NCBI RefSeq assembly: GCF_036588685.1
Contig: NC_086384.1
Span: forward strand, 59,272,001 to 59,336,000
Length of the DNA stretch: 64,000 bases
Direction of reading: 5' to 3'
From: Mytilus trossulus
Lineage: Eukaryota
Below the pieces are notes generated by a model. That model was given only the letters and a program-made list of their open reading frames with translations, did no database searches and had not been told where the DNA came from. Each line of letters starts with the position of its first letter. Position 1 is the first letter of the stretch. Below, one piece after another: positions 5,555 to 50,318 of this stretch. Position numbers and translations under genes: made by a program.

Positions 5555-7719
5555 GTATGATATAAGAGTACCTTCATGTTTAGATATAGCCATAGGATCA
5601 ACCTGTATGACTGTGTATGTTATCAGTTTACCTTTATGTTTAGATATAGCCATTGGATCAACCTGTATGACTGTGTATGATATTAGTGTACCTTTATGTT
5701 TAGATATAGCCATTGGATCAACCTGTATGACTGTGTATGATATCAGTTTACCTTTATGTTTAGATATAGACATTGTATCAACCTGAATGACTGTGTATGT
5801 TATCAGTTTACCTTTATGTTTAGATATAGCCATTGGATCAACCTGTATGACTGTGTATGTTATCAGTTTACCTTTATGTTTAGATATAGACATTGTATCA
5901 ACCTGAATGACTGTGTATGTTATCAGTTTACCTTTATGTTTAGATATAGCCATTGGATCAACCTGTATGACTGTGTATGATATCAGTTTACCTTTATGTT
6001 TAGATATAGCCATTGGATCAACCTGTATGACTGTGTATGTTATCAGTTTACCTTTATGTTTAGATATAGACATTGTATCAACCTGAATGACTGTGTATGT
6101 TATCAGTTTACCTTTATGTTTAGATATAGCCATTGGATCAACCTGTATGACTGTGTATGATATAAGTTTACCTTTATGTTTAGATATAGCCATTGGATCA
6201 ACCTGTATGACTGTGTATGTTATCAGTTTACCTTTATGTTTAGATATAGCCATTGGATCAACCTGTATGACTGTGTATGATATCAGTTTACCTTTATGTT
6301 TAGATATAGCCATTGGATCAACCTGTATGACTGTGTATGTTATCAGTTTACCTTTATGTTTAGATATAGACATTGTATCAACCTGAATGACTGTGTATGT
6401 TATCAGTTTACCTTTATGTTTAGATATAGCCATTGGATCAACCTGTATGACTGTGTATGATATAAGTTTACCTTTATGTTTAGATATAGCCATTGGATCA
6501 ACCTGTATGACTGTGTATGTTATCAGTTTACCTTTATGTTTAGATATAGCCATTGGATCAACCTGTATGACTGTGTATGTTATCAGATTACCTTTATGTT
6601 TAGATATAGCCATTGGATCAACCTGTATGACTGTGTATGATATAAGTTTACCTTTATGTTTAGATATAGCCATTGGATCAACCTGTATGACTGTGTATGT
6701 TATCAGTTTACCTTTATGTTTAGATATAGCCATTGGATCAACCTGTATGACTGTGTATGTTATCAGTTTACCTTTATGTTTAGATATAGACATTGTATCA
6801 ACCTGTATGACTGTGTATGTTATTAGTTTACCTTTATGTTTAGATATAGCCATTGGATCAACCTGTATGACTGTGTATGTTATTAGTTTACCTTTATGTT
6901 TAGATATAGCCATTGGATCAACCTGTATGACTGTGTATGATATCAGTTTACCTTTATGTTTAGATATAGCCATTGGATCAACCTGAATGACTGTGTATGT
7001 TATCAGTTTACCTTTATGTTTAGATATAGACATTGTATCAACCTGTATGACTGTGTATGTTATCAGTTTACCTTTATGTTTAGATATAGCCATTGGATCA
7101 ACCTGTATGACTGTGTATGTTATTAGTTTACCTTTATGTTTAGATATAGCCATTGGATCAACCTGTATGACTGTGTATGATATCAGTTTACCTTTATGTT
7201 TAGATATAGCCATTGGATCAACCTGAATGACTGTGTATGTTATCAGTTTACCTTTATGTTTAGATATAGACATTGTATCAACCTGTATGACTGTGTATGT
7301 TATCAGTTTACCTTTATGTTTAGATATAGCCATTGGATCAACCTGTATGACTGTGTATGTTATTAGTTTACCTTTATGTTTAGATATAGCCATTGGACCA
7401 ACCTGTATGACTGTGTATGTTATCAGTTTACCTTTATGTTTAGATATAGCCATTGGATCAACCTGTATGACTGTGTATGATATTAGTGTACCTTTATGTT
7501 AGGTATAGCTATTTGATCAACCTGTATGACTGTGTATGATATTAGTGTACCTTTATGTTTAGATATAGCCATTGGATCAACCTGTATGACTGTGTGTGAT
7601 ATCAGTTTACCTTCATGTTTAGATATAGCCATTGGATCAACCTGTATGACTGTGTATGATATTAGTTTACCTTTATGTTTAGATATAGCCATTGGATCAA
7701 CCTGTATGACTGTGTATGA
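5555..7719 (+). repeat. 60-bp tandem array of the gene 2 intron2/exon3 acceptor junction, 36 acceptor copies
   Basis: Unit tatcagtttacctttatgtttag|atatagccattggatcaacctgtatgactgtgtatga. AG ends at 5583+60n up to 7443, then 7502, 7562, 7622 and 7682. The last copy runs into unique exon 3. Confidence 0.95.
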
Positions 7720-7933
7720 GCTTGTTGGTAGTATTCTAAGCTTTGTTACCCTAGTGTTAGCGGCAGTAGCACTGGTTATCATTTGCCACACCCGACGTCA
7801 GCTCATGGCAGCAACCTCTAACCTGGAAAAGAACAGGAACAGTGGATGGTCTAAAGCCAAGGAGGCTATGGATACTAATAGATCCATCAAACCTCCAATG
7901 AAAGGATCACAGGCTGTACATGGTTGGGGATGA
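7683..7933 (+). CDS. LRR-TM gene 2, exon 3 (DIAIGSTC + TM + tail)
   Basis: Frame of ORF 7526..7933. TM segment LVGSILSFVTLVLAAVALVIIC; tail homologous to gene 1 (WSK.K.AM.TNR..KPPMK); AATAAA at 8025. Confidence 0.85.
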
Positions 7934-8286
7934 GATCTAAGTGACAGCATGGATCCATAGGTGTCAGTGGTACGACATGGACTAATCGAAACTATATGTT
8001 TTAATTTGATATAAAGTAAATGGAAATAAAACATGTATTTGAACTATATTATGTAATTGTATAGTATGTTTTTTTTAAATTAGCGTAAAAACCCGTTATA
8101 GAATTTTGTTTCCCAAAATTAGGAAAGTATCACACGTGGTCAAGATCCCAAAATTAACGCACATATTTAAATAACAAACATAAAAAGGGTCGAAAGATAC
8201 CAAAGGGGCATTTAAGAGCATTCTATACAGTTCCTATCTCATGATGATTTTATTACAAAAATTTACATACGAGCTATGTTTTACCC

Positions 8287-9170: not shown

Positions 9171-10059
9171 AGTGTTTCAAGCATTTAATAAAAGATATAC
9201 CTTCATATTTGCAACTTATTTTCGAAAATGGTAAAAATGTATTATGTTGTTAATGACATTTTCTCTACCTTTTTATTACATTTATTAGTTTTAAATTGTT
9301 ATCTTAAAAGTTTTAAACGGGTGCTCGTGGGCAAATAACACCATTTCTAAAATCTAGAAAGAAAGCAGCGAAATATATTAGAATCAAACCAAAACAGAGA
9401 AAAACAAAATTAGGTTACAATTAATTACATTATAAACAAAACCAAAAACAGAAAAAAAAAACATAATGATGTTACAACTAATAACATTTACAACAACTCA
9501 AAACAGGTTATGAGACAACAGTTGTCAGGACAAACAACCCTCATCTCTCCTTGTATCAACAACCACAATCATTCTCTTCTTGTCAGTCTAATATCAACAA
9601 CCACACTCATTCTCTCCTTGTCGGCCTTATATCAACAACCACAATCATTCTCTCCTTGTCGACCTTATAACAACAACAAACTGTTTGTATCATTGTGCTG
9701 GTTAGTCCAATATCAACACGTACAGTTAGCGTTCCTAACATTCTGAACTGATAGACTGCAATGTTGCAGAAATCCGATTCATTTGAACTGTTTTGGATAG
9801 TGTTTCATTGGCAATCTAACAAAATCTGCTTGTTTTATATGAAGACAAAACATTTAAAAGGACCTTGATAGCTGTGAAATTATATTATCCGTCAAAAAGC
9901 TAAAAATGTCTCCGTGTTTTGCCAATATTTAATCCAAATGTTGCTCTATTGTTTCGTTCAAACATCATTAATATCATTAATGGCCTGTGCATTCTCTTTG
10001 TCGGTTAACATTTAATTAACTTAAAGGTTTAGTGTCTGTGCATGAATCAAGTCTATATA

Positions 10060-17258: not shown

Positions 17259-18135
17259 ATGGGTATTCATTTTTGTGTTCTGTTTGTTATATATGTTTTG
17301 TCATCAGCATCCGGGGACCCTACCGGTTGTACATATGATGCATCGACAATTTTATTCACCTGTAACGCAAGAAGTTGGAGTTTGCCTCTTGTATTTTCTG
17401 ACTTTACAACTGCGCAGCCGCAAAGACTGATGCTGAAAGATGTTGATGGCGAAATCTCAGCAAGTGCACCGAATGGACCGGCATTTTCTGGATTCAGTAG
17501 TATTAACACTGCAACTTTTGACCCAGACTATGCGCCAGCCCTGTATATCATGTGTTATTTCGGAGGGCAGTTAATTTTGGACAAAGACGCGTTTGCCGAT
17601 TTCAGTTACGTTGAGGAAGTCAAAATCATAAACTGTGATATTCTATCTATTCCAGTTGAAGCATTCTCTTACTTTGGAGATGTCAACATATTCCACATCC
17701 AAGGCGGATCCATTTCTAATATGGTGGCTGATAGTTTCAAAAATCTGAACGTAAATCGAATGACAACAGTACCGAATCCTAAGGGAGAGTTCGCAATTAT
17801 TAACTCAGAGCTGACGTCCGGTGCATTGGCGTTCGGAGCATTGTTTAATATGCCAAATATTGAACGAGTGCTGATTGAAAACGCTCACCTATCAACAGTA
17901 ACATCCGACATGTTCTATGCTTTATCAAAGTTAAATTATGCTTCCCTGAATTATAACACGTTTACAACCATCCCGAACAACATGTTTGCCAATGTGTTTG
18001 GCCTTGCCTCAGTAGATATGTATGGCATCAGCTGGGACTGTTCCTGCGACAACCTCTGGTTCTTGGACTATCTATCAGAGAACAATATCACTATGAATGG
18101 CGACATAGTCTGTAGCACTCCTGTTGATTACGAAC
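17259..18135 (+). CDS. LRR-TM gene 3, exon 1
   Basis: MGIHFCVLFVIYVLSSASG signal peptide, DPTGCTYD cap, LRRs and WDCSCDNLWF...IVCSTP; donor GAAC|GTAAGT, phase 1. Confidence 0.9.
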
Positions 18136-18159
18136 GTAAGTTACATTATTAAATTAAAA

Positions 18160-18462
18160 TTGAAAATGGAAATGGGGAATGTGTCGAAGAGACAACATCC
18201 CGACCAAAGAAAAAAACAACAGCAGAAGGTCTACAACAGATCTTCAATGTAGTGATAAATTTCCGCACCTGGAGTCGTCCTTCAGCTGGCCCCTAAACAA
18301 ATATATACTAGTTCAGTGATAATGAACGCCATACAAATTTATTTCCAAATTGTACACAAAAAACTAAAATTAAAGCAAAACAAGACGAACAAAGAATTGG
18401 GACGGTCGCAAAAATGCGGCGGGTTTCAACATGTTTATGAGGTCGCAGCCCTCCCCTATACC
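18160..18462. mobile_element. Interspersed repeat family B fragment; other copies ~34790-35475 and ~41540-41672 (reverse), ~56697-57315
   Basis: Shared attgagaatggaaatggggaatgtgtcaaagagacaac...ggaggcgtccttcagctggcccctaaac. Confidence 0.75.
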
Positions 18463-18473
18463 TCTGATGAACA

Positions 18474-21400
18474 CCTGTTGATTACGAACGTAAGTGACAT
18501 TGTATGCAGCACTCCTGTTGATTACGAACGTGAGTGACATTGTATGTAGCACTGACATTTTCTGAAGCACTTCTTATGATTAGGAGAGTAAGAGACAAGG
18601 TATGTAGCACTCCTATTGATAACAAACGAAAGTGACATTGTCGGTAGCACTCCTGTTGATTACAAATGTAAGTTACATTGTCAGTAACACTCCGGTTGAT
18701 TACGAACGTAAGTGACATTTTCTGTAGCACTCCTGTTGATTACGAATGTACGTGACATTGTATGTAGCACTTATGTTGATTACGAACGTAAGTGACATTA
18801 TCGGTAGCACTCCTGTTAATTACGAACATAAGTGACATTGTATGTAGCACTCCTGTTGATTACGAACGTAAGTGACATTGTATGTAGCACTGCTATTGAT
18901 TACGAACGTAAGTGAAATTGTATGTAGCACTTATGTTGATTACGAACGTAAGTGACATTATCGGTAGCACTCCTGTTAATTACGAACATAAGTGACATTG
19001 TATGTAGCACTCCTGTTGATTACGAACGTAAGTGACATTGTATGCAGCACTCCTGTGGATTACGAACGTAAGTGACATTGTATGCAGCACTCCTGGTGAT
19101 TACGAACGTGAGTGACATTGTATGTAGCACTGCTGTTGATTACGAACGTAAGTGACATGGTCTTTAGCACCCCTGTTGATTACGAACGTAAGTGAAATTG
19201 TATGCAGCACTCCTGGTGATAACGAACGTGAGTGACATTGTATGTAGCATTCCTGTTGATTACGAACGTAAGTGACATTGTATGCAGCACTCCTGTTGAT
19301 TACGAACGTGAGTGACATTGTATGTAGCACTGACATTTTCTGAAGCACTTCTTATGATTAAGAGAGTAAGAGACAAGGTATGTAGCACTCCTATTGATAA
19401 CAAACGAAAGTGACATTGTCGGTAGCACTCCTGTTGATTACAAATGTAAGTTACATTGTCAGTAACATTCCTGTTGATTACGAACTTAAGTGACATTTTC
19501 TGTAGCACTCCTGTTGATTACGAACGTACGTGACATTGTATGTAGCACTTCTGATTACGAACGTAAGTGCAATTATCGGTAGCATTCCTGTTGATTACGA
19601 ACGTAAGTGACATTGTCTGTAGCACTCATGTTGATTACGAACGTAAGTGACATTGTATGTAGCACTGCTGTTGATTACGAACGTAAGTGACATTGTATGT
19701 AGCACTGCTGTTGATTACGAACGTTAGTGACATTGTATGCAGCACTCCTGTTGATTACGAACGTAAGTGATATTGTATGTAGCACTGCTGTTGATTACCA
19801 ACGTAAGTGACATTGTCTGTAGCACTCCTGTTGATTACGAACGTAAGTGACATTGTATGTAGCACTCATGTTGATTACGAACGTAAGTGCAATTATCGGA
19901 AGCATTCCTGTTGATTACGAACGTAAGTGATATTGTATGTATCACTGCTGTTGATTACGAACGTAAGTGACATTGTATGTAGCACTGCTGTTGATTACGA
20001 ACGTAAGTGACATTGTATGTAGCACTCATGTTGATTACGAACGTAAGTGACATTGTATGTAGTACTCCTGTTGATTACGAACGTAAGTGACATTGTATGT
20101 AGCACTGCTGTTGATTACGAACGTTAGTGACATTGTATGCAGCACTCCTGTTGATTACGAACGTAAGTGCAATTATCGGTAGCATTCCTGTTGATTACGA
20201 ACGTAAGTGACATTGTCTGTAGCACTCCTGTTGATTACGAACGTAAGTGACATTGTATGTAGCACTCATGTTGATTACGAACGTAAGTGCAATTATCGGA
20301 AGCATTCCTGTTGATTACGAACGTAAGTGATATTGTATGTAGCACTGCTGTTGATTACGAACGTAAGTGACATTGTATGTAGCACTGCTGTTGATTACGA
20401 ACGTAAGTGACATTGTATGTAGCACTCATGTTGATTACGAACGTAAGTGACATTGTATGTAGTACTCCTGTTGATTACGAACGTAAGTGACGTTGTATGT
20501 AGCACTGCTGTTGATTACGAACGTTAGTGACATTGTATGTAGCACTCATGTTGATTACGATCGTAAGTGACATTGTATGTAGCACTCATGTTGATTACGA
20601 ACGTAAGTGCAATTATCGGAAGCATTCCTGTTGATTACGAACGTAAGTGATATTGTATGTAGCACTGCTGTTGATTACGAACGTAAGTGACATTGTATGT
20701 AGCACTGCTGTTGATTACGAACGTAAGTGACATTGTATGTAGCACTCATGTTGATTACGAACGTAAGTGACATTGTATGCAGCACTCCTGTTGATTACGA
20801 ACGTAAGTGACATTGTATGTAGCACTGCTGTTGATTACGAACGTTAGTGACATTGTATGCAGCACTCCTGTTGATTACGAACGTAAGTGCAATTATCGGT
20901 AGCATTCCTGTTGATTACGAACGTAAGTGACATTGTCTGTAGCACTCCTGTTGATTACGAACGTAAGTGACATTGTATGTAGCACTCCTGTTGATTACAA
21001 ACGTAAGTGACATTATCGGAAGCATTCCTGTTGATTACGAACGTTGGTGTCATTGTATGTAGCACTGCTGTTGATTACGAACGTAAGTGACATTGTATGT
21101 AGCACTCCTGTTGATTACGAACGTAAGTGACATTGTATGTAGCACTCCTGTTGATTACGAACGTAAGTGAAATTGTATGTAGCACTCCTGTTGATTACGA
21201 ACGTAAGTGAAATTGTATGTAGCACTCCTGTTGATTACGAACGTTAGTGATATTGTATGTAGTACTCCATTTGATTACGAACGTAAGTGAAATTGTATGT
21301 AGCACTCCTATTAAATACCTCCGTAAGTGATATTGTATGTAGAACTCCTGTTGATTAAGAAATTAATTTATATTGTCGTTAGCATTCCTTTTGAGTACGA

Positions 21401-21688
21401 ACGTAAGTTACAATGTCTGTATCATTTTGGTTAATTACGTTAGCAAGTTAAATTGTATGTAGCACTCCTGTTGATTACGACCGTAAGTGACATTCTCTGT
21501 AGCACTCCTGATGATTTCGAACGTAAGTTACATTGTCGGTAGTACACTCGCTGATTACGAAGGTAAGTTACATTGTATGTAGCACTCTTGATGATTACGA
21601 ACGTTAGTGGCATTGTATGTAGCACTCCTGTTGATTAGGAACGTAAGTGAAATTGTCGGTAGCACTCCTGTTGATTACGAACGTAAGT
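18474..21688 (+). repeat. 40-bp tandem array of the gene 3 exon1/intron1 donor junction, ~80 copies
   Basis: Unit gacattgtatgtagcactcctgttgattacgaac|gtaagt versus the true exon end gacatagtctgtagcactcctgttgattacgaac|gtaagt (18102-18141). Confidence 0.95.
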
Positions 21689-21959
21689 CTCCAAAGTTGT
21701 ACCGGTACTTTAATGTATTGTACAGCTAACTATGTCTTGTTCCATACATTTGCTTTTAAGCACACGTTAGAGAAAAACGTTACCTGTATTCAACAAGGAA
21801 ATGATTTACCTTGATACATATAAATATAGATACAAATATGATTATCAATCAGGTGATAAATAAAGGTCAGCACACGTTATCCACTTGCCACATTTATGCA
21901 ATATTGTATATACATTGCCACTGTTGATAAAACATTTCATCGCTACTATTCTCTTTCAG

Positions 21960-22025
21960 ATAAACGTGCAACAAAGTACAACTTGGACACTTGTGTTACA
22001 GATGGGGTGTGCGGTAAAATAACAG
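21960..22025 (+). CDS. LRR-TM gene 3, exon 2 (HKRATKYNLDTCVTDGVCGKIT)
   Basis: ttctctttcag acceptor and CAG|GTAAAG donor; 66 nt. Confidence 0.85.
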
Positions 22026-22424: not shown

Positions 22425-24007
22425 TATGTCGGTTCTTGTAATATATTGTTTTCTACAAACTCTCAGATACATTTTGTTTTTACTAGGTATTGCTATTGGT
22501 AGTATGTCGGTACTTGTAATATATTGTTTTCTACAAACTCTCAGATACATTTTGTTTATACTAGGTATTGCTATTGGTAGTACGTGTGTGAGTATGTAAT
22601 ATATTGTTTTCTACAAACTCTCAGATACATTTTGTTTTTACTAGGTATTGCTATTGGTAGTATGTCGGTACTTGTAATATATTGTTTTCTACAAACTCTC
22701 AGATACATTTTGTTTATACTAGGTATTGCTATTGGTAGTACGTGTGTGAGTATGTAATATATTGTTTTCTACAAACACTCAGATACATTTTGTTTTTACT
22801 AGGTATTGCTATTGGTAGTATGTCGGTACTTGTAATATATTGTTTTCTACAAACTCTCAGATACATTTTGTTTTTACTAGGTATTGCTATTGGTAGTATG
22901 TCGGTACTTGTAATATATTGTTTTCTACAAACACTCAGATACATTTTGTTTTTACTAGGTATTGCTATTGGTAGTATGTCGGTACTTGTAATATATTGTT
23001 TTCTACAAACTCTCAGATACATTTTGTTTTTACTAGGTATTGCTATTGGTAGTATGTCGGTACTTGTAATATATTGTTTTCTACAAACTCTCAGATACAT
23101 TTTGTTTATACTAGGTATTGCTATTGGTAGTACGTGTGTGAGTATGTAATATATTGTTTTCTACAAACACTCAGATACATTTTGTTTTTACTAGGTATTG
23201 CTATTGGTAGTATGTCGGTACTTGTAATATATTGTTTTCTACAAACTGTCAGATACATTTTGTTTTTACTAGGTATTGCTATTGGTAGTATGTCGGTACT
23301 TGTAATATATTGTTTTCTACAAACACTCAGATACATTTTGTTTTTACTAGGTATTGCTATTGGTAGTATGTCGGTACTTGTAATATATTGTTTTCTACAA
23401 ACTCTCAGATACATTTTGTTTTTACTAGGTATTGCTATTGGTAGTATGTCGGTACTTGTAATATATTGTTTTCTACAAACACTCAGATACATTTTGTTTT
23501 TACTAGGTATTGCTATTGGTAGTATGTCGGTACTTGTAATATATTGTTTTCTACAAACTGTCAGATACATTTTGTTTTTACTAGGTATTGCTATTGGTAG
23601 TATGTCGGTACTTGTAATATATTGTTTTCTACAAACACTCAGATACATTTTGTTTTTACTAGGTATTGCTATTGGTAGTATGTCGGTACTTGTAATATAT
23701 TGTTTTCTACAAACTGTCAGATACATTTTGTTTTTACTAGGTATTGCTATTGGTAGTATGTCGGTACTTGTAATATATTGTTTTCTACAAACACTCAGAT
23801 ACATTTTGTTTTTACTAGGTATTGCTATTGGTAGTATGTCGGTACTTGTAATATATTGTTTTCTACAAACTGTCAGATACATTTTGTTTTTACTAGGTAT
23901 TGCTATTGGTAGTATGTCGGTACTTGTAATATATTGTTTTCTACAAACACTCAGATACATTTTGTTTTTACTAGGTATTGCTATTGGTAGTACGTGCGTG
24001 AGTATGT
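22425..24007 (+). repeat. 78/80-bp tandem array of the gene 3 intron2/exon3 acceptor junction, 20 acceptor copies
   Basis: Unit tgtaatatattgttttctacaaactctcagatacattttgtttttactag|gtattgctattggtagtatgtcggtact. AG ends at 22486, 22564, 22644, 22722, 22802, 22880, 22958, 23036, 23114 and 23194, then every 78 bp to 23974. Confidence 0.95.
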
Positions 24008-24276
24008 TCGAGCTGATTAACTACATCCTCTTGTTAATCACACTGGTCATCTCCTGTGCAGCTCTTGGTCTTATTATCCACACTAAGCGGCAAGTCAGTG
24101 ACACCATAGAACCAAACAAGCCTGAACAATCACCTAGCAGGAACACGAGCCAAAACAGAATTGCGGGAAATCAACGAGAGCCGCCATCTTTAGAAGAATT
24201 ACAAGCTGGTCCGTTGCCTAGGAAACAAACTGGAGCTACTATCAGTAACATGGATTCCATAGATACGGAAGCGTAA
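23975..24276 (+). CDS. LRR-TM gene 3, exon 3 (GIAIGSTC + TM + tail ending DTEA)
   Basis: Frame of ORF 23134..24276. TM segment LINYILLLITLVISCAALGLII; AATAAA at 24465. Confidence 0.85.
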
Positions 24277-27224: not shown

Positions 27225-28086
27225 ATGTATTCCACACTAGTGGTGTGTTTATGTTTCTGTGCGCTTACACCGTTGTCTGCACTTCCTGTTGGCTGTACTT
27301 ACGATTCAACTCAAATTCTCTACACGTGTAGTGCACGAAGTTGGTCTTTGCCTTTGGCGTACGCTGACTTTGACAGCGTAGAACCACAGCGAATAGTTTT
27401 GGAAGAACTATCTGGAACAATAGCAGCAAATACGTTTTCTGGATTCACGAGTATCAACACGGCAAACTTCGATTCAAAGTATGTTCCAAGTCTTTATATG
27501 ATATGCTATGCAAACTCTGATATAATCCTTGACAGCGCTGCGTTCACTGATTTCTCGTTTATCGACGAGGTTAAGATTATCGATTGTGGATTATTATCGA
27601 TTCCATCGGATGTGTTTTCAGGATTTGGCGATGTTAATTTGTTTCATATCACCGGTGGATCCATCACTAACATGCATCCTGATGGTTTCAAAGGACTAAA
27701 TGTGAAAAAGATGACACAATACAGTGATCCTCTCGGAGAATTCGCCATTATAAACTCACGAGTCGTAGGCAGTACAATGGCCACCGGGGCTCTGTTTAAT
27801 TTGCTTGAAGTGGAGCGAGTGCGCCTTGAACGTGCACATTTAATGGTGCTTCAGGCTGACATGTTTTCTGCTCTGAAAAAGTTGAAGTATATTTCTCTAA
27901 ATGACAACATAATGACCAAGCTGGAGGGTAATATGTTCACTGGTCTAGATGCTCTGTCTCACGTGGATTTGTACGGAATCAGTTGGTTCTGTACGTGTGG
28001 TTATCTCTGGTTCTTAGAGTATTCCAAAGAAAATAACATCACCATTGGCGGGGATATTGTTTGCCAAGACCCAGCTGATTATTTAA
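27225..28086 (+). CDS. LRR-TM gene 4, exon 1
   Basis: Signal peptide MYSTLVVCLCFCALTPLSA; paralog of gene 3; donor TTAA|GTAAGT, phase 1. Confidence 0.9.
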
Positions 28087-28571: not shown

Positions 28572-28637
28572 ACAAGAGAGCTACAACTTACTACCAGAGC
28601 ACGTGTGTAGAGTATATCGTGTGCGATGGTCAAATCG
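28572..28637 (+). CDS. LRR-TM gene 4, exon 2 (NKRATTYYQSTCVEYIVCDGQI)
   Basis: Poly-T...ttcag acceptor and TCG|GTAAAT donor; 66 nt. Confidence 0.85.
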
Positions 28638-30021: not shown

Positions 30022-30065
30022 GCGTCACTGATGAGTCTTATGTAGACGAAACGCGCGTCTGGCGT
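30022..30065 (+). ncRNA. Minimal type I hammerhead ribozyme motif with intact core; predicted cleavage after C30059
   Basis: Stem I gcgtca/tggcgt, CUGAUGA, stem II gtct-tatgt-agac, GAAA, minimal stem III with palindromic GCGC loop, GUC triplet. This is the layout known for Penelope-associated minimal hammerheads. Confidence 0.75.
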
Positions 30066-39413: not shown

Positions 39414-40284
39414 ATGATGGAATTGTCATATATTGTAACACTTCTATGTCTACCATCAATATTCTCTGATCCAACAGGATGCACTTACAACGCAGACACA
39501 GTACTTTACACTTGTAATGCCAGACTTTGGGCACTTCCGTTAGTATTTTCCTCCTTCACTAATCAACCACAGAGACTGTTGCTGAAAGACGTTGATGGAG
39601 AACTTCCGGCGTCTGCTCCTAACGGTCCAACATTTACAGGATTTAGTGCAATTGACACTTCATTGTTTGACATCAGATTTCCAGCGTCATTCCACATCAT
39701 GTGCTTTGCGAACACAAGTCTAATCATATTTAAGGACACATTTCAAGATTTAGGATTTATTGACGAGGTGATCATTCAAGACTGTAATATTTTATCACTT
39801 CCGGTGCAAGTATTTTCGTATTTTGGTGAGGTAAACTCGTTTATCATACAAGGAGGGTCAATAAACAATATGGTGGCAGATAGCTTTAATGGACTTGACG
39901 TAAAACCAATTCCAGCTTCACTGACCCCAAAAGGAGAATTCGTATTACAAAATACCCAGGTTATATCTCAAAGTTTAGCGTTTGGAGTTTTCTATAATAT
40001 ATACAATGTAACAACTATGGTACTCGACAACATCGACATAACGTCAATTACCAAAGACACGTTTTATGCTAATCCATATCTGACAAATTTAACAATCAGT
40101 AACAACAATATAGCTAGTCTCCCTAGTCTACTGTTTGGATCATCGCATTCATTGGAGTTCCTGTCCTTTTGGGGTTTGCCATGGATTTGTACTTGTAGTG
40201 ATCTCTGGATTGTCCCTTACGTCATCAACAACAATATAACCCTGTACGGAGACTTGATATGCTCATCACCCGTAGCTCAATCTA
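39414..40284 (+). CDS. LRR-TM gene 5, exon 1
   Basis: Signal peptide, DPTGCTYN cap, LRRs and WICTCSDLW...LICSSP; donor TCTA|GTAAGT, phase 1. Confidence 0.9.
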
Positions 40285-41761: not shown

Positions 41762-41827
41762 ATACAAAAGTGACGTCATATTATGCAGCCAATTGTTTGA
41801 ACTATGATGTATGTCAAGGAGAAGCAG
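41762..41827 (+). CDS. LRR-TM gene 5, exon 2 (NTKVTSYYAANCLNYDVCQGEA)
   Basis: tattttag acceptor and CAG|GTTTGT donor; 66 nt. Confidence 0.85.
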
Positions 41828-44800
41828 GTTTGTTTCGTTGATCTACTATTTAAAGTACAGTTTCCAAACTATGATGTATGTCAAGGAGAAGCAGGTTTGT
41901 TTCGTTAATCTACTATTTAAAGTACCGTTTCCAAACTATGATGTATGTCTAGGAGAAGCAGGTTTGTTTCGTTGATCTACTATTTAAAGTACCGTTTCCA
42001 AACTATGATGTATGTCTAGGAGAAGCAGGTTTGTTTCGTTGATCTACTATTCAAAGTACCGTTTCCAAACTATGATGTATGTCAAGGAGAAGCAGGTTTG
42101 TTTCGTTAATCTACTATTTAAAGTACCGTTTCCAAACTATGATGTATGTCAAGGAGAAGCAGGTATGTTTCGTTGATCTACTATTTAAAGTACCGTTTCC
42201 AAACTATGATGTATGTCAAGGAGAAGCAGGTTTGTTTCGTTGATCTACTATGTTAAAGTACCGTTTCCAAACTATGATGTATGTCAAGGAGAAGCAGGTT
42301 TGTTTCGTTGATCTACTATTTAAAGCACCGTTTCCAAACTATGATGTATGTCAAGGAGAAGCAGGTTTGTTTCGTTGATCTACTATTTAAAATACCGTTT
42401 CCAAACTATGATGTATGTCAAGGAGAAGCAGGTTTGTTTCGTTGATCTACTACCGTATAGCGGGTTATTTTCGCGGGTGTAAAATTTCGCGATTTTCATT
42501 GAACAAGGTATACGAAATATTTTAGCGGTTATGATTTTGGCGGATGAAAACTTTTATTTATACCTTTGCATGTACACCTTTAATTTCGCGGAATTTATTT
42601 TGGCGATTTTCTTCTATCCCCGAAAATAAGCGAAAATTTACACCCCCGCGAAAATAACCCGCTATACGATATTTAAAGTACCGTTTCCAAACTATGATGT
42701 ATGTCAAGGAGAAGCAGGTTCGTTTCGTTGATCTACTATTTAAAGTACCGTTTCCAAATTATGATGTATGTCAAGGAGAAGCAGGTTTGTTTCGTTGATC
42801 TACTATTTAAAGTACCGTTTCCAAACTATGATGTATGTCAAGGAGAAGCAGGTTTGTTTCGTTGATCTACTATTTAAAGTACCGTTTCCAAACTATGACG
42901 TATGTCAAGGAGAAGCAGGATTGTTTCGTTGATCTACTATGTTAAAGTACCGTTTCCAAACTATGATGTATGTCAAGGAGAAGCAGGTTTGTTTCGTTGA
43001 TCTACTAAGTTAAAGTACCGTTTCCAAACTATGATGTATGTCAAGGAGAAGCAGGTTTGTTTCGTTGACTACTATTTAAAGTACCGTTTCCAAACTATGA
43101 TGTATGTCTAGGAGAAGCAGGTTTGTTTCGTTGATCTACTATTTAAAGTACCGTTTCCAAACTATGATGTATGTCAAGGAGAAGCAGGTTTGTTTCGTTA
43201 ATCTACTATTTAAAGTACCGTTTCCAAACTATGATGTATGTCAATGAGAAGCAGGTATGTTTCGTTGATCTACTATTTAAAGTACCGTTTCCAAACTATG
43301 ATGTATGTCAAGGAGAAGCAGGTTTGTTTCGTTGATCTACTATGTTAAAGTACCGTTTCCAAACTATGATTTATGTCTAGGAGAAGCAGGTTTGTTTCGT
43401 TAATCTACTATTTAAAGTACCGTTTCCAAACTATGATGTATGTTAAGGAGAAGCAGGTTAGTTTCGTTGATCTACTATGTTCAAGTACCGTTTCCAAACT
43501 ATGATGTATGTCAAGGAGAAGCAGGTTTGTTTCGTTAATCTACTATTTAAAGTACCGTTTCCAAACTATGATGTATGTCAATGAGAAGCAGGTATGTTTC
43601 GTTGATCTACTATTTAAAATACCGTTTCCAAACTATGATGTATGTCAAGGAGAAGCAGGTTTGTTTCGTTGATCTACTATGTTAAAGTACCGTTTCCAAA
43701 CTATGATGTATGTCAAGGAGAAGCAGTTTTGTTTCGTTGATCTACTATTTAAAGCACCATTTCCAAACTATGATGTATGTCAAGGAGAAGCAGGTTTGTT
43801 TCGTTGATCTACTATTTAAAGTACTGTTTCCAAACTATGATGTATGTCAAGGAGAAGCAGGTTTGTTTCGTTGATCTACTATTTAAAAGTACCGTTTCCA
43901 AACTATGATGTATGTCAAGGAGAAGCAGGTTTGTTTCGTTGATCTACTATTTAAAGTACCGTTTCCAAACTATGATGTATGTCAAGGAGAAGCAGGTTTG
44001 TTTCGTTGATCTACTATTTAAAGTACCGTTTCCAAACTATGATGTATGTCAAGGAGAAGCAGGTTTGTTTCGTTGATCTACTATTTAAAGTACCGTTGCC
44101 AAACTATGACGTATGTCAAGGAGAAGCAGGTTTGTTTCGTTGATCTACTATGTTAAAGTACCGTTGCCAAACTATGATGTATGTCAAGGAGAAGCAGGTT
44201 AGTTTCGTTGATCTACTATGTTAAAGTACCGTTTCCAAACTATGATGTATGTCAAGGAGAAGCAGGTATGTTTCGTTGATCTACTATGTTAAAATACCGT
44301 TTCCAAACTATGATGTATGTCAAAGAGAAGCAGGTTTGTTTCGTTGATCTACTATTTAAAGTACCGTTTCCAAACTATGACGTATGTCAAGGAGAAGCAG
44401 GTTTGTTTCGTTGATCTACTATGTTAAAGTACCGTTTCCAAACTATGATGTATGTCAAGGAGAAGCAGGTTTGTTTCGTTGATCTACTATGTTAAAGTAC
44501 CGTTTCCAAACTATGATGTATGTCAAGGAGAAGCAGATTAGTTTCGTTGATCTACTATGTTAAAGTACCGTTTCCAAACTATGATGTATGTCAAGGAGAA
44601 GCAGGTTAGTTTCGTTGATCTACTATGTTAAAGTACCGTTTCCAATCTATGATGTATGTCAAGGAGAAGCAGGTTAGTTTCGTTGATCTACTATGTTAAA
44701 GTACCGTTTCCAAATTATGATGTATGTCAAGGAGAAGCAGGTTTGTTTCGTTGATCTACTATTTAAAGTACCGTTTCCAAACTATGATGTATGTCAAGGA

Positions 44801-44927
44801 GAAGCAGGTTTGTTTCGTTGATCTACTATTTAAAGTACCGTTTCCAAACTATGATATATGTCAAGGAGAAGCAGGTATGTTTCGTTGATCTATTTTATGT
44901 TTCAGTACCGTTTCAAAGCTGTGATGC
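41800..44927 (+). repeat. 67/68-bp tandem array of the gene 5 exon2/intron2 donor junction, ~43 copies
   Basis: Unit aactatgatgtatgtcaaggagaagcag|gtttgtttcgttgatctactatttaaagtaccgtttcca. The first copy is the real exon end; donors fall at 41827, 41894, 41961 and onward. Confidence 0.95.
42453..42669. mobile_element. 217-bp MITE with TA target-site duplication (Tc1/mariner-type)
   Basis: TIRs of ~38 bp (ccgtatagcgggttattttcgcggg... / ...cccgcgaaaataacccgctatacga). Flanking TA at 42451-52 and 42670-71; the empty site is seen in neighbouring units. Confidence 0.9.
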
Positions 44928-45664
44928 TTAGAAAAAACATATTTCAATATAAAAAAGAAGATGTGGTATGATTGCCAATGAGACAACTATCCACAAAAGA
45001 CCAAAATGTCACAAACATTAACAACTATCCACAAAAGACCAAAATGTCACAAACATTAACAACTATAGGTCACCGTACAGCCTTCAAAAATTAACAAAGC
45101 CCTTACCACATAGTCAGCTATAAAAGGCCCAGATAAGACAATGTGAAACAATTCAAACGAGAAAACTAACGGCCTTATGTATCTAAACACGTTGAAAGTT
45201 GTAATCATTTGTTATGGAACAAAAATGTATGACTTTAATTGATTATCATTAAGATGCAGTTACCGTCATCAAATAAAAATCACAAATACAATGACGAGAC
45301 AGCAAGAAAATAATAATGTAGAAAGATAATTGATTTGAAATTGTATGCTAAATGGTCAATGACAAATATTTCATGTAGAGTCAGGACGAGAGAACTTAGC
45401 AATGAATCCATTTTGGTGTTTTGAATAATGACTTGACCGGGATGTAAGGTTAACTAAAAGCTAAATGTACATCCTGAACAGCCATATATAAACCCCTTTT
45501 TAGTATCGGAAATGGGAGAGTAAATACTCTACAATTTGGGTAGAAAGGTTAGCATAGCATGTTATAATTATCCTCGTTGCATGTTGTACAATTTAACGAA
45601 TAAACAATCACATGTTTGAAATTACAGATTGTCAGTTGACAACTCTATATCTCACCTTTATATT

Positions 45665-48600
45665 GATTTATTGACGTGTGTGTACGCTCCCTGATTTATT
45701 GACGTGTGTGTACGCTCCCTGATTTATTGACGTGTGTGTAAGCTCCCTGATTTATTGACGTGTGTGTACGCTCCCTGATTTATTGACATCTGTGTACGCT
45801 TCCTGATTTATTGACGTGTGTGTACGCTCCCCGATTAATTGACGTGTGTGTACGCTTCCTGATTTATTGACGTGTGTGTACGCTCCCTGATTTATTGACG
45901 TGTGTGTAAGCTACCTGATTTATTGACGTGTGTGTAAGCTACCTGATTTATTGACGTGTGTGTAAGCTCCCTGATTTATTGACGTGTGTGTAAGCTCCCC
46001 GATTAATTGACGTGTGTGTACGCTCCCTGATTTATTGACGTGTGTTTAAGCGACCTGATTTATTGACGTGTGTGTAAGCTACCTGATTTATTGACGTGTG
46101 TGTAAGCTCCCTGAATTATTGACGTGTGTGTAAGCTCCCTGATTTATTTACTAGTGTGTAAGCTCCCTGATTTATTAACGTGTATGTTACCTACTTGATT
46201 TATTGACGTATGTGTAAGTTCCCTGATTTATTGACGTGTGTGTACGCTCTCTGATTTATTGACGTGTGTGTAAGCTCCCTGATTTATTGACGTGTGTGTA
46301 AGCTCCCCGATTTATTGACGTATGTGTAAGTTCCCTGATTTATTGACGTCTGTGTACGTTCCCTGATTTATTGACGTCTGTGTATGTTCCCTGATTTATT
46401 GACATCTGTGTAAGCTCCCTGATTTACTGACGTGTGTGTAAGCTCCCTGATTTGTTGACGTGAATGTTACCTCCCTGATGTATTGACGTGTGTGTAAGTT
46501 ACCTGATTTATTGACGTGTGTGTAAGCTACCTGATTTATTGACGTGTGTGTAAGCTCCCTGATTTTATTGACGTGTGTGTAAGCTCCCCGATTAATTGAC
46601 GTGTGTGTACGCTCCCTGATTTATTGACGTGTGTGTAAGCTACCTGATTTATTGACGTGTGTGTAAGCTCCCTGAATTATTGACGTGTGTGTAAGCTCCC
46701 TGATTTATTTACTAGTGTGTAAGCTCCCTGATTTATTAACGTGTATGTTACCTACTTGATTTATTGACGTATGTGTAAGTTCCCTGATTTATTGACGTGT
46801 GTGTTCGCTCCCTGATTTATTGACGTGTGTGTAAGCTCCCTGATTTATTGACGTGTGTGTAAGCTCCCCGATTTATTGACGTATGTGTAAGTTCCCTGAT
46901 TTATTGACGTCTGTGTACGTTCCCTGATTTATTGACGTCTGTGTATGTTCCCTGATTTATTGACATCTGTGTAAGCTCCCTGATTTACTGACGTGTGTGT
47001 AAGCTCCCTGATTTGTTGACGTGAATGTTACCTCCCTGATGTATTGACGTGTGTGTACGCTCCCTGATTTATTGACGTGTGTGTAGCTCCCCGATTTATT
47101 GACATGTGTGTACGCTTCCTGATTTATTGACATGTGTGTAAGCTTCCCGATTTATTAACGTGTATGTTACCTCCCTAATTTATTGACGTATGTTTAAGTT
47201 CCCTGATTGATTGACGTGTGTGTTACCTCTCTGATTTTTTGACGTTTGTGTAAGCTCCCTGATTAATTGACGTGTGTGTAAGCTCCCTGATTTGTTGACG
47301 TGAATGTTACCTCCCTGATGTATTGACGTGTGTGTACGCTCCCTGATTTATTGACGTGTGTGTAAGCTCCCTGAATTATTGACGTGTGTGTAAGCTCCCT
47401 GATTTATTGACGTGTGTGTAAGCTCCCTGATTTATTAACGTGTATGTTACCTACTTGATTTATTGACGTATGTGTAAGTTCCCTGATTTATTGACGTGTG
47501 TGTACGCTCCCTGATTTATTGACGTGTGTGTAAGCTCCCTGATTTATTGACGTGTGTGTAAGCTCCCCGATTTATTGACGTATGTATAAGTTCCCTGATT
47601 TATTGACGTCTGTGTACGTTCCCTGATTTATTGACGTATGTGTATGTTCCCTGATTTATTGACATCTGTGTAAGCTCCCTGATTTACTGACGTGTGTGTA
47701 AGCTCCCTGATTTGTTGACGTGAATGTTACCTCCCTGATGTATTGACGTGTGTGTAAGTTACCTGATTTATTGACGTGTGTGTAAGCTACCTGATTTATT
47801 GACGTGTGTGTAAGCTCCCTGATTTGTTGACGTGAATGTTACCTCCCTGATGTATTGACGTGTGTGTAAGTTACCTGATTTATTGACGTGTGTGTAAGCT
47901 ACCTGATTTATTGACGTGTGTGTAAGCTCCCTGATTTATTGACGTGTGTGTAAGCTCCCCGATTAATTGACGTGTGTGTACGCTCCCTGATTTATTGACG
48001 TGTGTGTAAGCTACCTGATTTATTGACGTGTGTGTAAGCTCCCTGAATTATTGACGTGTGTGTAAGCTCCCTGATTTATTTACTAGTGTGTAAGCTCCCT
48101 GATTTATTAACGTGTATGTTACCTACTTGATTTATTGACGTATGTGTAAGTTCCCTGATTTATTGACGTGTGTGTACGCTCCCTGATTTATTGACGTGTG
48201 TGTAAGCTCCCTGATTTATTGACGTGTGTGTAAGCTCCCCGATTTATTGACGTATGTGTAAGTTCCCTGATTTATTGACGTCTGTGTACGTTCCCTGATT
48301 TATTGACGTCTGTGTATGTACCCTGATTTATTGACATCTGTGTAAGCTCCCTGATTTACTGACGTGTGTGTAAGCTCCCTGATTTGTTGACGTGAATGTT
48401 ACCTCCCTGATGTATTGACGTGTGTGTACGCTCCCTGATTTATTGACGTGTGTGTAGCTCCCCGATTTATTGACATGTGTGTACGCTTCCTGATTTATTG
48501 ACATGTGTGTAAGCTCCCCGATTAATTAACGTGTATGTTTCCTCCCTAATTCATTGACGTATGTTTAAGTTCCCTGATTGATTGACGTGTGTGTTACCTC

Positions 48601-50277
48601 CCTGATTTATTGACGTTTGTGTAAGCTCCCTGATTAATTGACGTGTGTGTAAGCTCCCTGATTTGTTGACGTGAATGTTACCTCCCTGATGTATTGACGT
48701 GTGTGTACGCTCCCTGATTTATTGACGTGTGTGTAAGCTCCCCGATTTATTGACATGTGTGTACGCTTCCTGATTTATTGACATGTGTGTAAGCTCCCTG
48801 ATAAATTGACGTGTGTGTAAGCTCCCCGATTTATTGACGTGTGTGTAAGATCCCTGGTTTATTGACGTCTGTGTAAGCTCCATGATTTATTGACATCTGT
48901 TTAAGTTCCCTGATTTATTGACCTGTTTGTATGATCTCTGATTTATTGACGTCTGTGTAAGCTCCCCGATTTATTGACGTGTGTGTAAGCTACCTGATTT
49001 TTTGACGTGTGTGTAAGCTACCTGATTTGTTGACGTGAATGTTACCTCCCTGATGTATTGACGTGTGTGTACGCTCCCTGATTTATTGACGTGTGTGTAA
49101 GCTCCCTGATTTATTGACGTGTGTGTAAGCTCCCTGATAAATTGACGTGTGTGTAAGCTCCCCGATTTATTGACGTGTGTGTAAGCTCCCTGGTTTATTG
49201 ACGTCTGTGTAAGCTCCATGATTTATTGACATCTGTTTAAGTTCCCTGATTTATTGACCTGTTTGTATGATCTCTGATTTATTGACGTCTGTGTAAGCTC
49301 CCCGATTTATTGACGTGTGTGTAAGCTACCTGATTTTTTGACGTGTGTGTAAGCTCCCTGATTTATTGACGTGTGTGTAAGCTCCCCGATTTATTGACGT
49401 GTGTGTAAGCTCCCTGGTTTATTGACGTCTGTGTAAGCTCCCTGATTTATTGACGTGTGTGTAAGCTCCCCGATTTATTGACGTGTGTGTAAGCTCCCCG
49501 ATTTATTGACGTGTGTGTAAGCTTCCTGATTTATTGACGTGTGTGTAAGCTCCCCGATTTATTGACGTGTGTGTAAGCTACCTGATTTATTGACGTTTTT
49601 GTAAGCTCCCAGATTTATTGACGTCTGTGTAAGCTCCCTGATTTATTGACGTCTATGTAAGCTACCTGAATGTTACCTCCCTGATGTATTGACGATTTAT
49701 TGACGTCTGTGTAAGCTCCCTGATTTATTGACGTGTGTGTAAGCTCCCTGATTTATTGACGTGTGTGTAAGCTCCCTGATTTGTTGACGTGAATGTTACC
49801 TCCCTGATTTATTGACGTCTGTGTAAGCTACCTGATTTATTGACGTGTGTGTAAGCTCCCTGATTTATTGACGTGTGTGTAAGCTTCCTGATTTAATGAC
49901 GTGTGTGTAAGCTCCCTGATTTATTGACGTGTGTGTAAGCTCCCTGATTTGTTGACGTGAATGTTACCTCCCTGATGTATTGACGTGTGTATACGCTCCC
50001 TGATTTATTGACGTGTGTATACGCTCCCTGATTTATTGACGTGTGTGTAAGCTCCCTGATTTATTGACGTGTGTGTAAGCTCCCTGATTTATTGACGTCT
50101 GTGTAAGCTACCTGATTTATTGACGTGTGTGTAAGCTCCCTGATTTATTGACGTGTGTGTAAGCTCCCTGATTTATTGACGTGTGTGTAAGCTCCCTGAT
50201 TTATTGACGTCTGTGTAAGCTACCTGATTTATTGACCTGTGTGTAAGCTCCCTGATGTATTGACGTTTTTACGCTCC
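45665..50277. repeat. 28-bp minisatellite (~165 copies) in gene 5 intron 2, ending ~40 bp before the exon 3 acceptor
   Basis: Unit gatttattgacgtgtgtgtaagctccct, with repeated higher-order variant blocks. Confidence 0.95.
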
Positions 50278-50318
50278 ATCGTTTTTTTGTTTTATTCCTA
50301 TACATCAATTTTTTTCAG

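What the first reader, a model, noticed from the sequence alone, without database searches (positions are those of the whole stretch)
5555..50318. Recurrent, independent amplification of splice junctions into tandem arrays across an LRR receptor cluster
Seen: five arrays in four paralogs are exon/intron boundary sequence amplified in tandem, each with its own unit. They are gene 2 acceptor (36x60), gene 3 donor (~80x40), gene 3 acceptor (20x78/80), gene 4 acceptor (2x~61) and gene 5 donor (~43x67). Every one flanks the juxtamembrane part of the protein (end of exon 1, exon 2, start of exon 3), and most units keep their AG or GT. The units are unrelated to each other, so they arose separately. 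Inference: this may be an undescribed VNTR-based splice tuning system, in which decoy or alternative splice-site ladders set the ratio of membrane-bound, stalk-extended, secreted and NMD-degraded receptor, with copy-number variation giving fast allelic diversity. Alternatively it may be a mutational process targeted to splice junctions. I cannot search the literature, so novelty is unverified.
Basis: partly seen in the sequence, partly recalled or inferred. Interest (0 to 1): 0.92.

Follow-up and report, generated by a model that had tools for sequence, protein, structure and literature searches.

The report
Splice-junction minisatellites in mussel LRR genes
Several introns in a cluster of mussel receptor-like genes hold long tandem arrays copied from their own exon/intron junctions, but the mRNA is still spliced normally, so this is a dense example of the already described "mirage" minisatellites and not a new splice-tuning system.

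Summary
The units of the g2 acceptor (60 bp), g3 donor (40 bp), g3 acceptor (78 bp) and g5 exon-2 donor (67 bp) arrays are copies of the gene's own junction. The g4 "array" is only a short two-copy relic. Three more donor arrays lie in paralogs just upstream, giving 7 arrays in 11 genes.

A second copy of the whole cluster on contig C39, probably the other haplotype, has all seven arrays at different copy numbers (for example 77 vs 234 and 20 vs 58).

The "tuning system" reading is not supported:
- Spliced contigs from four runs join the true first donor of g3 to exon 2 and then to the last acceptor copy.
- Orthologous Mytilus proteins carry only the canonical joints.
- The GT in the copies is conserved no better than other unit positions.

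The kind is already described: "mirage" minisatellites in amphioxus, and the human F7, CBS, LMNB2 and PDGF junction VNTRs.

What stays unexplained is the excess of arrays at junctions (binomial p about 1e-4 to 8e-3). A milder excess shows genome-wide: donor-motif arrays are 2.4 to 2.6 times their reversed controls.

This scan had already noted junction arrays in unrelated genes of the same genome.

The parts
3488..4364 (+). g2 exon 1 (signal peptide, LRRNT, LRRs, start of LRRCT); phase-1 donor A|GTAAGT after 4364
   Evidence: ORF and Pfam LRR_8; sequence; M. galloprovincialis orthologue P0014 is 96% identical
5053..5109 (+). g2 exon 2 (57 nt, two Cys, end of LRRCT)
   Evidence: Sequence with AG|..|GT; the peptide NKKATKYYADSCDLSVSCA is present in P0014 and near-identical in P0018
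5555..7718 (+). g2 acceptor-junction minisatellite, 60 bp x36; the last copy is the real acceptor (AG 7681-7682). 13 junction copies (about 17 units by TRF length) in the C39 copy
   Evidence: TRF; sequence; 35/35 copies keep AG
7683..7933 (+). g2 exon 3 (DIAIGSTC.., TM helix, short tail, stop)
   Evidence: matches P0014 and P0018
17259..18135 (+). g3 exon 1; the real donor GAAC|GTAAGT lies after 18135
   Evidence: RNA joint 18135|21960 in 4 runs; M. edulis orthologue P0010
18155..18470 (.). Dispersed repeat (SINE/MITE-like) inserted between the real g3 donor and its array; absent from the C39 copy
   Evidence: Very high depth of many unrelated contigs; in C39 the array abuts the donor, with spacing 40 x232
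18474..21688 (+). g3 exon-1 donor-junction minisatellite, 40 bp x~77-80; 234 copies in C39
   Evidence: TRF; 71/77 copies keep GT; no RNA contig lies on it
21960..22025 (+). g3 exon 2 (66 nt)
   Evidence: RNA contigs and joints; peptide HKRATKYNLDTCVTDGVCGKIT in P0010
22425..23992 (+). g3 acceptor-junction minisatellite, 78/80 bp x20; the last copy is the real acceptor (AG 23973-23974). 58 copies in C39; 282 codons are open upstream in the exon frame
   Evidence: TRF; the RNA joint lands on the last copy
23975..24276 (+). g3 exon 3 (GIAIGSTC.., TM, tail, stop)
27225..28086 (+). g4 exon 1
   Evidence: M. californianus orthologue P0001 is 95% identical
28572..28637 (+). g4 exon 2 (66 nt)
   Evidence: peptide NKRATTYYQSTCVEYIVCDGQI in P0001
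30368..30444 (+). g4 acceptor region: two copies of TGTATCTTCAGGTATA 61 nt apart (a relic or chance duplication, not an array); exon 3 starts at 30440
   Evidence: Sequence; not called by TRF
39414..40284 (+). g5 exon 1
41762..41827 (+). g5 exon 2 (66 nt); donor CAG|GTTTGT
   Evidence: Sequence
41800..44926 (+). g5 exon-2 donor-junction minisatellite, 67/68 bp x43-46; 28 copies in C39
   Evidence: TRF
45664..50266 (+). 28-bp x164 minisatellite in g5 intron 2, not demonstrably junction-derived; 52 copies in C39
   Evidence: TRF; it shares only ACGTGTGT with the exon-3 start
50319..50938 (+). g5 exon 3 (TM and tail)

Best explanation
These are 'mirage'-type minisatellites: intronic tandem arrays seeded by a short tandem duplication that happened to span an exon/intron junction.

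The genes form a cluster of 11 old paralogs in a Mytilus genome. Each has three exons and encodes an LRR ectodomain, a TM helix and a short tail.

Shown:
- The real junction is always the outermost copy, the first for donor arrays and the last for acceptor arrays.
- The dominant g3 mRNA uses exactly those outer sites, so each array is removed as part of the intron.
- Copy number differs 1.3- to 3-fold between the two copies of the cluster, and mobile elements have landed in some arrays on one copy only.
- The splice dinucleotides in the inner copies decay like the rest of the unit.

Inferred:
- The seed duplications arose by slippage between microhomologies. Examples are GTATGA for g2, TATGT for the g3 acceptor, and TAGC or ACAT for the 40-bp donor units.
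- Expansion and contraction came by unequal exchange or replication slippage.
- The arrays are tolerated because site choice depends on position. The spliceosome takes the first donor after the exon, and it takes the acceptor that is followed by the real terminal exon, as shown experimentally for human F7.

Not explained: why arrays in these introns are so often anchored on junctions. I take this as a bias in where seeds arise or survive, not as evidence of function.
For: - Units equal the gene's own junction. There are seven such arrays in 11 paralogs.
- Both cluster copies carry all seven arrays, at different copy numbers: 81/30, 19/15, 8/6, 77/234, 43/28, 35/13, 20/58.
- C12 and C39 pair 1:1 at 94-99.6% aa identity, while the paralogs are only 33-55% identical to g4.
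- Spliced contigs in 4 runs from 4 studies show only 18135|21960 and 22025|23975. No contigs lie on the arrays except one 108-nt piece at depth 5 against 40.
- Orthologue proteins have canonical joints.
- GT retention in copies roughly tracks the square of per-column identity, with no consistent excess.
- Donor periods of 40, 67 and 92 are not multiples of 3, so inner donors cannot give in-frame products.
- Precedents behave the same way: amphioxus mirages on both donor and acceptor sides are length-unstable between haplotypes and leave splicing unaffected (PMC3087553, PMC3902484). In human F7 only the most upstream donor is used whatever the repeat number (PMC1557585).
Against: - Junction anchoring is far above random placement (P = 8e-5 to 8e-3). 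A purely neutral, uniform model does not predict this.
- Both acceptor arrays have periods that are multiples of 3 (60, 78) and are open in the exon frame for 3 and 11 units, as expected if upstream acceptors were sometimes used. The chance that both periods are multiples of 3 is about 1/9.
- RNA evidence comes from assembled contigs of one gene (g3). Contigs drop rare isoforms and cannot be linked to array length.
- No RNA evidence was obtained for g5, gA, gB or gC.
Confidence: 0.7

Rival explanations
1. Functional VNTR splice-tuning system. Ladders of decoy or alternative sites set the ratios of normal, stalk-extended, secreted and NMD-degraded receptor, and copy number gives allelic diversity.
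For: - Copies keep near-consensus sites, and AG is kept in all copies of both acceptor arrays.
- Acceptor units are in frame and partly stop-free.
- Copy numbers differ strongly between alleles.
- Arrays are concentrated in one receptor-like cluster.
- One 108-nt contig inside the g3 acceptor array appears in one run.
- In human IFI 6-16 and CBS the two proximal pseudo-sites are used (PMC1557585).
Against: - Only canonical joints appear in 4 runs and in 4 orthologue models.
- Decoy GT shows no extra conservation.
- Donor units are out of frame and contain stops.
- The would-be inserted peptides are hydrophobic intron-derived sequence, not stalk-like.
- The same kind of array was noted by this scan in unrelated housekeeping-type genes (unchecked), and donor-motif arrays are enriched genome-wide.
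- An immune role for this family is not established.
Confidence: 0.08
2. A junction-targeted mutational process. Something coupled to transcription, splicing or exon chromatin makes short tandem duplications arise preferentially at exon/intron boundaries in this genome. The cluster is a hot spot because it is highly polymorphic and recombinogenic. This is compatible with the best explanation and would account for its unexplained part.
For: - 7 of 8-11 intronic arrays are junction-anchored.
- AGGTAAGT arrays give 900 matches against 382 for the reversed motif, and 9 against 2 distinct arrays on contig C1.
- AGGTATGT gives 2834 against 1097.
- TTTTCAGG gives 435 against 256.
- Amphioxus authors also call the generating mechanism unclear and the phenomenon possibly general (PMC3087553).
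Against: - The genome-wide enrichment is modest, counted per match and not per array, and rests on three motifs.
- No mechanism is known.
- A selective filter could contribute: wholly exonic seeds are removed while junction-spanning seeds survive, and seeds may arise more readily in exon-like sequence.
Confidence: 0.35
3. Few ancient arrays inherited through gene duplication and kept homogeneous by concerted evolution, instead of seven independent births.
For: gA and g3 lie on opposite sides of the deepest split of the family, yet both have a 40-bp unit with the same 23-nt exon plus 17-nt intron split. Homologous junctions are hit repeatedly.
Against: - Periods differ at homologous junctions: 40/92/40, 42-43/67 and 60/78.
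- Each unit matches its own gene's present junction, with many exact 25-mers, although the exon ends have diverged about 50% between paralogs.
- Four or five paralogs (gD, g1, g4, g6; g7 only partly seen) have no array.
Confidence: 0.1
4. The arrays, or their sizes, are assembly artefacts.
For: Long near-identical arrays are hard to assemble. No DNA reads were laid on them here. The amphioxus paper reports a mis-assembled mirage (PMC3087553).
Against: All seven arrays appear in two independently assembled copies of the cluster. They have internal variant structure and polymorphic TE insertions.
Confidence: 0.03

Closest known systems
'Mirage' minisatellites of amphioxus (Adh3, globins BflGb6/BflGb9, troponin C, PGBD5; Canestro et al. 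2002 as cited in PMC3087553; PMC3902484)
   Same: [quoted passage not shown] Many units keep AG/GT, regular splicing is unaffected, and copy number differs between haplotypes. The generating mechanism is unknown.
   Different: The mussel arrays are in a mollusc and are far larger (up to 234 copies and 9.4 kb, against a few copies). Units are shorter (40-92 bp). Seven arrays are concentrated in one 11-gene cluster.
Human junction-spanning intronic VNTRs: F7 IVS7 37-bp, IFI 6-16, CBS IVS13, LMNB2, PDGF (PMC1557585)
   Same: The first monomer spans the exon/intron boundary, so identical pseudo-donors follow the real one. The arrays are polymorphic in copy number. The authentic, most upstream site is used.
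   Different: The human cases are single genes, on the donor side only, with 5-25 copies. In IFI 6-16 and CBS two proximal pseudo-sites are also used, which contigs could not assess here.
Variable internal tandem repeats at exon-intron boundaries of human segmental-duplication paralogs (De Grassi & Ciccarelli 2009, PMC2812944)
   Same: Boundary-overlapping repeats occur in polymorphic groups of paralogs.
   Different: The human repeats change exon/intron structure between recent paralogs and often have transcript support for both forms. Here the paralogs are old and the mRNA structure is unchanged.
Intron creation by tandem duplication or tandem arrays (Rogers model; Zhuo et al. 2007, title seen in the reference list of PMC2891723; Hellsten 2011, PMC3265369)
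   Same: Duplicated AG|GT-bearing segments supply extra splice sites. The g3 acceptor units begin GT and end AG.
   Different: I found no new intron or exon here. The arrays sit inside pre-existing introns.
Coding stalk VNTRs of LRR receptors such as platelet GPIb-alpha (from my own knowledge)
   Same: Both are copy-number-variable repeats between the LRR domain and the TM helix of an LRR protein.
   Different: Those repeats are exonic and translated. These arrays are absent from RNA contigs and from orthologue proteins.

Membership tests
Junction-spanning intronic minisatellite ('mirage' / F7 IVS7 type) | Head-to-tail array of 10-150-bp units inside an intron | tested here: met
   TRF: periods 40-92, 8-234 copies. 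The introns were defined by RNA joints and orthologue proteins.
Junction-spanning intronic minisatellite ('mirage' / F7 IVS7 type) | The outermost monomer is the real exon/intron boundary, so units hold exon sequence plus a splice site | tested here: met
   Exact 25-nt junction copies occur in every array. In g3 on C12 a later TE separates the real donor from the array, while in C39 they abut.
Junction-spanning intronic minisatellite ('mirage' / F7 IVS7 type) | Copy-number polymorphism between alleles | tested here: met
   C12 against C39 copy numbers differ for all seven arrays. That C39 is the allelic haplotype and not a recent duplicate is inferred.
Junction-spanning intronic minisatellite ('mirage' / F7 IVS7 type) | Regular splicing is maintained and inner copies are silent | tested here: met
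   For g3, canonical joints only in 4 runs. For g2, g3 and g4, canonical orthologue models. Not tested for g5, gA, gB, gC. Rare isoforms are not excluded.
Regulatory splice-site VNTR (tuning system) | Inner sites are used, with isoform ratios depending on copy number | tested here: not met
   No inner-site joint in 4 runs. Dependence on copy number could not be tested.
Regulatory splice-site VNTR (tuning system) | Splice signals in the copies are conserved above the unit background | tested here: not met
   Anchor-independent GT retention of 0.50-1.00 tracks the squared column identity of 0.54-0.93. Acceptor values in C39 are unreliable because of length variants.
Coding VNTR stalk | Repeat units are present in mRNA or protein | tested here: not met
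   Depth is zero on the arrays in RNA contigs, and no repeat units occur in P0001, P0010, P0014 or P0018.
LRR-TM proteins (bivalve family auto-named 'reticulon-4 receptor-like' or 'slit homolog-like') | LRR repeats with Cys-capped ends, a single TM helix and a short tail | tested here: met
   Pfam LRR_8/LRR_5 on exon 1 of g1-g5. A hydrophobic 20-25-aa stretch followed by a basic residue (K/R/H) is in exon 3. Homologues of about 400 aa occur in Mytilus, Pinctada, Argopecten and Saccostrea. Function and any immune role were not tested.
Recursive splice sites | A juxtaposed 3' and 5' splice site (AG|GT) used stepwise | not tested
   g3 acceptor copies read AG|GTATTG, a weak donor, while g2 copies read AG|ATATAG. 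No intermediates can be seen in contigs.

The most novel reading that the evidence does not exclude
Mussel genomes may have a process that seeds minisatellites preferentially on splice junctions, coupled to transcription, splicing or exon chromatin. It would have hot spots in polymorphic receptor-gene clusters. The resulting allele-specific arrays of tens to hundreds of U1 or U2AF binding sites would measurably change expression, for example through low-level decoy use with NMD, U1 recruitment or intron length.
Probability: 0.15. Interest if true: 0.7.

Novelty: new member of a known kind. Interest (0 to 1): 0.38.

Why it matters
- It takes a proposed new regulatory system off the table and places the structures in a described class.
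- It records that this class occurs in a mollusc, on both donor and acceptor sides, at sizes of up to 234 identical donors. These sizes make a natural stress test of position-dependent splice-site choice.
- The density (7 arrays in 22 introns of one cluster) and the milder genome-wide excess of donor-motif arrays suggest a junction bias in how minisatellites arise. That question has stayed open since the amphioxus reports.
- In practice, such arrays mislead gene predictors and assemblers. They could also serve as hypervariable markers in Mytilus.

Tried and rejected
- Coding stalk repeats: rejected. Arrays are absent from RNA contigs and orthologue proteins.
- Backup donors that rescue a mutated site: rejected. 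Donor periods of 40, 67 and 92 shift the frame.
- The 28-bp array as a junction derivative: it shares only an 8-mer with exon 3, so I do not claim it.
- The C39-only 50-bp x64 array as a junction array of this family: it has no single-copy source in C12, so it is left as a note.
- Hammerhead ribozyme in g4 intron 2: a CUGAUGAG...CGAAAC motif is visible, but Rfam gives no hit at the gathering score.
- Checking genome-wide arrays for an upstream exon: not possible.
- First conservation test: discarded because finding units by the junction motif biased the core columns. It was redone with a remote anchor.
- Spliced protein models were not joined. Only exon 1 was searched, by reference.
- No complex or structure prediction was needed.
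Full report
**What the window is.** It is AT-rich (about 34% G+C) and 33% tandem repeat. On the + strand it carries six paralogous genes. In each, exon 1 encodes a signal peptide and an LRR ectodomain (Pfam LRR_8/LRR_5 on g1-g5). For the five genes completed in the window, a 57-66-nt exon 2 carries two cysteines and exon 3 encodes a TM helix and a short tail. Every exon-1 donor read at the nucleotide level is phase 1.

The window is G000:C12:59272001-59336000 of a 1.3-Gb assembly, and the cluster has 11 paralogs on C12. The best named relatives are uncharacterised Mytilus proteins at 95-96% identity. Relatives of about 400 aa at 33-38% identity occur in Pinctada, Argopecten (auto-named 'reticulon-4 receptor-like 2') and Saccostrea. 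The organism is therefore a Mytilus. An immune function is not established. Only exon 1 was searched, by reference, and I built no joined spliced model.

**The observation.** Reading the sequence shows that the units are copies of each gene's own junction:
- g2 acceptor, 60 bp: 23 nt of intron end plus 37 nt of exon-3 start.
- g3 donor, 40 bp: TAGCACTCCTGTTGATTACGAAC|GTAAGT and following bases.
- g3 acceptor, 78/80 bp.
- g5 exon-2 donor, 67/68 bp: 28 nt of exon plus 39 nt of intron.

Counting matches to the 25-nt junction gives 35, 77, 20 and 43 copies. GT or AG is intact in 35/35, 71/77, 20/20 and 40/43.

The g4 '2x61' is only a 16-nt repeat with a little more similarity upstream. I do not count it as an array.

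Upstream of the window the same cluster holds three more donor arrays: gA exon 1 (40 bp, 81 copies), gB exon 2 (42-43 bp, 19 copies) and gC exon 1 (92 bp, 8 copies, split by a MITE). These match two earlier first-reader notes. In all there are seven junction arrays in 11 genes.

**Is it more than chance?** Without their arrays these introns are only about 300-900 nt long. A random 40-90-nt seed duplication would therefore span a junction about 20-25% of the time. Observing 7 junction arrays among 8 to 11 intronic arrays gives P = 8e-5 to 8e-3. The bias is real but less extreme than it first looks.

**A second copy of the cluster.** Contig C39 carries all 11 genes in 1:1 correspondence at 94-99.6% aa identity, whereas the paralogs are only 33-55% identical to g4. 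Unique flanks are 86-98% identical. I read C39 as the alternative haplotype; a very recent segmental duplicate is the other possibility. All seven arrays are present there with the same units but different copy numbers:

| Array | C12 | C39 |
|---|---|---|
| gA exon-1 donor | 81 | 30 |
| gB exon-2 donor | 19 | 15 |
| gC exon-1 donor | 8 | 6 |
| g3 exon-1 donor | 77 | 234 |
| g5 exon-2 donor | 43 | 28 |
| g2 acceptor | 35 | 13 |
| g3 acceptor | 20 | 58 |

The dispersed repeat that separates the real g3 donor from its array in C12 (18155-18470) is absent in C39, where the array abuts the exon. The contiguous 92-bp array in C39 suggests the gC MITE is also C12-only. The arrays are thus real, older than the split of the two copies, and turn over fast. 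Non-junction arrays (28 bp, 25 bp, 38 bp) vary just as much.

**Splicing.** I laid contigs of four runs (three organism codes, four studies) on 18061-24050. Each run has one contig that joins 18135|21960 (GT..AG) and 22025|23975 (GT..AG). That is the authentic first donor, then exon 2, then the last acceptor copy. These joints show the contigs derive from spliced RNA.

No contig lies on either array, except one 108-nt piece in one run at depth 5 against 40 for the mRNA contig. That depth is pooled over about 20 near-identical units. Contigs drop rare variants, so minor isoforms are not excluded.

Independent support comes from annotated orthologues. M. edulis P0010 (g3), M. galloprovincialis P0014 and M. 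californianus P0018 (g2), and M. californianus P0001 (g4) all show the canonical exon1|exon2|exon3 joints and no repeat units.

**Are the decoy sites maintained?** My first test was biased, because it found units through the junction motif. I repeated it with an anchor on the far side of each unit. GT retention was then 0.87, 0.87, 0.50, 0.75, 0.89, 1.00, 0.93 and 0.78. The squared column identities were 0.79, 0.82, 0.54, 0.69, 0.83, 0.89, 0.93 and 0.93. There is no consistent excess. In gA the G of GT is the most variable core position.

Donor periods of 40, 67 and 92 shift the frame. Acceptor periods of 60 and 78 are in frame, and the frame is open for 56-66 codons (g2) and 282 codons (g3) upstream of exon 3. 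However, the encoded peptides are hydrophobic intron-derived sequence, and two multiples of 3 arise by chance about 1 time in 9.

**Origin.** Unit boundaries coincide with short microhomologies between the exon side and the intron side. Examples are GTATGA for g2, TATGT for the g3 acceptor, TAGC for gA, and ACAT or TAGC for g3. This fits slippage-type seed duplications followed by unequal exchange, which is an inference.

Different periods at homologous junctions, units that match each gene's own diverged exon end, and old paralogs all argue for mostly independent births. The shared 40-bp period and 23+17 split of gA and g3 is a caveat.

**Beyond the family.** Earlier notes of this scan report junction arrays in unrelated genes of the same genome, including TRAPPC1, MPRIP, a cyclase and an EGF-exon gene.

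My own test was a whole-genome pattern search for three copies of a motif spaced 20-50 nt apart, except TTTTCAGG at 30-60 nt:
- AGGTAAGT gives 900 matches against 382 for the reversed motif. On contig C1 that is 9 distinct arrays against 2.
- AGGTATGT gives 2834 against 1097.
- TTTTCAGG, which is acceptor-like, gives 435 against 256.

These are match counts, not array counts, so they are rough. They point to a modest genome-wide excess, with this cluster far denser at 7 arrays in 22 introns.

**What is known.** The kind is described.
[quoted passage not shown] They are length-unstable between haplotypes, do not disturb splicing, and have an unknown generating mechanism (PMC3087553, PMC3902484).
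- In humans, minisatellites whose first monomer spans an exon-intron boundary are listed for F7, IFI 6-16, CBS, LMNB2 and PDGF. For F7, experiments show that only the most upstream donor is chosen whatever the repeat number (PMC1557585).
- Boundary repeats in human segmental-duplication paralogs are also reported (PMC2812944).
- I found no report for molluscs.

**Verdict.** The 'undescribed splice-tuning system' is not supported. The best reading is large, fast-evolving mirage-type minisatellites that are spliced out with their introns. It is a new member of a known kind. It is notable for its size, for having both polarities, and for its density in one cluster.

Noticed in passing
window 30301-30858 and 33184-33729 (with 58-bp arrays at 31161-31867 and 34041-34734): A tandem duplication of about 2.9 kb repeats g4 exon 3 (TM plus tail, near-identical ORFs) together with its downstream 58-bp array. 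g4 therefore has two alternative terminal exons, or one is a spare copy.
   Followed up: no
L029:3104-6300 (C39:2459104-2462300): A 50-bp x64 array is present only in the C39 copy, upstream of g7 exon 1. Its unit reads TTTGTTTAG|30 nt|GTAAAAGT, like a whole micro-exon with both splice sites. No single-copy source exists in the C12 region.
   Followed up: partly
window 18155-18470: A SINE/MITE-like element has very high RNA-contig depth from many genomic copies. It is inserted right behind the real g3 donor in C12 but is absent in C39.
   Followed up: partly
window 28860-28925 and 30010-30070: Two copies of a hammerhead-like core (CTGATGAG...CGAAAC) sit in g4 intron 2, reminiscent of the retrozyme or Penelope-type elements of bivalves. 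Rfam gives no match at the gathering score.
   Followed up: partly
window 57216-57280 (-): Rfam SECIS_1 match at 39.1 bits (gathering score 35), on the strand opposite g6 within its presumed long intron 2. No selenoprotein gene was looked for.
   Followed up: no
C12:59241087-59241905 (+) vs C39:2378540-2379406 (-): The segment with paralog gB and its exon-2 donor array is inverted in C39 relative to C12. The gA-gB spacing is 13.5 kb against 31.7 kb, and the extra C39 sequence is full of degenerate tandem repeats (TRF periods 49-498 bp, mostly ~120-240).
   Followed up: no
window 9554-9677 and 13266-13389: The 38-bp repeat has 3.3 copies at two places of a duplicated segment in C12, but 39 copies in one array in C39 (C39:2403008-2404497).
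   Followed up: no
window 60267-62038 and C12:59340119-59342238: Two arrays of a ~330-bp unit (330 bp x5.4 and 332 bp x6.4, the second in reverse orientation) lie inside what appears to be a ~14-kb g6 intron 2. The only TM exon found for g6 is at C12:59342954, 2.2 kb before g7 exon 1.
   Followed up: partly
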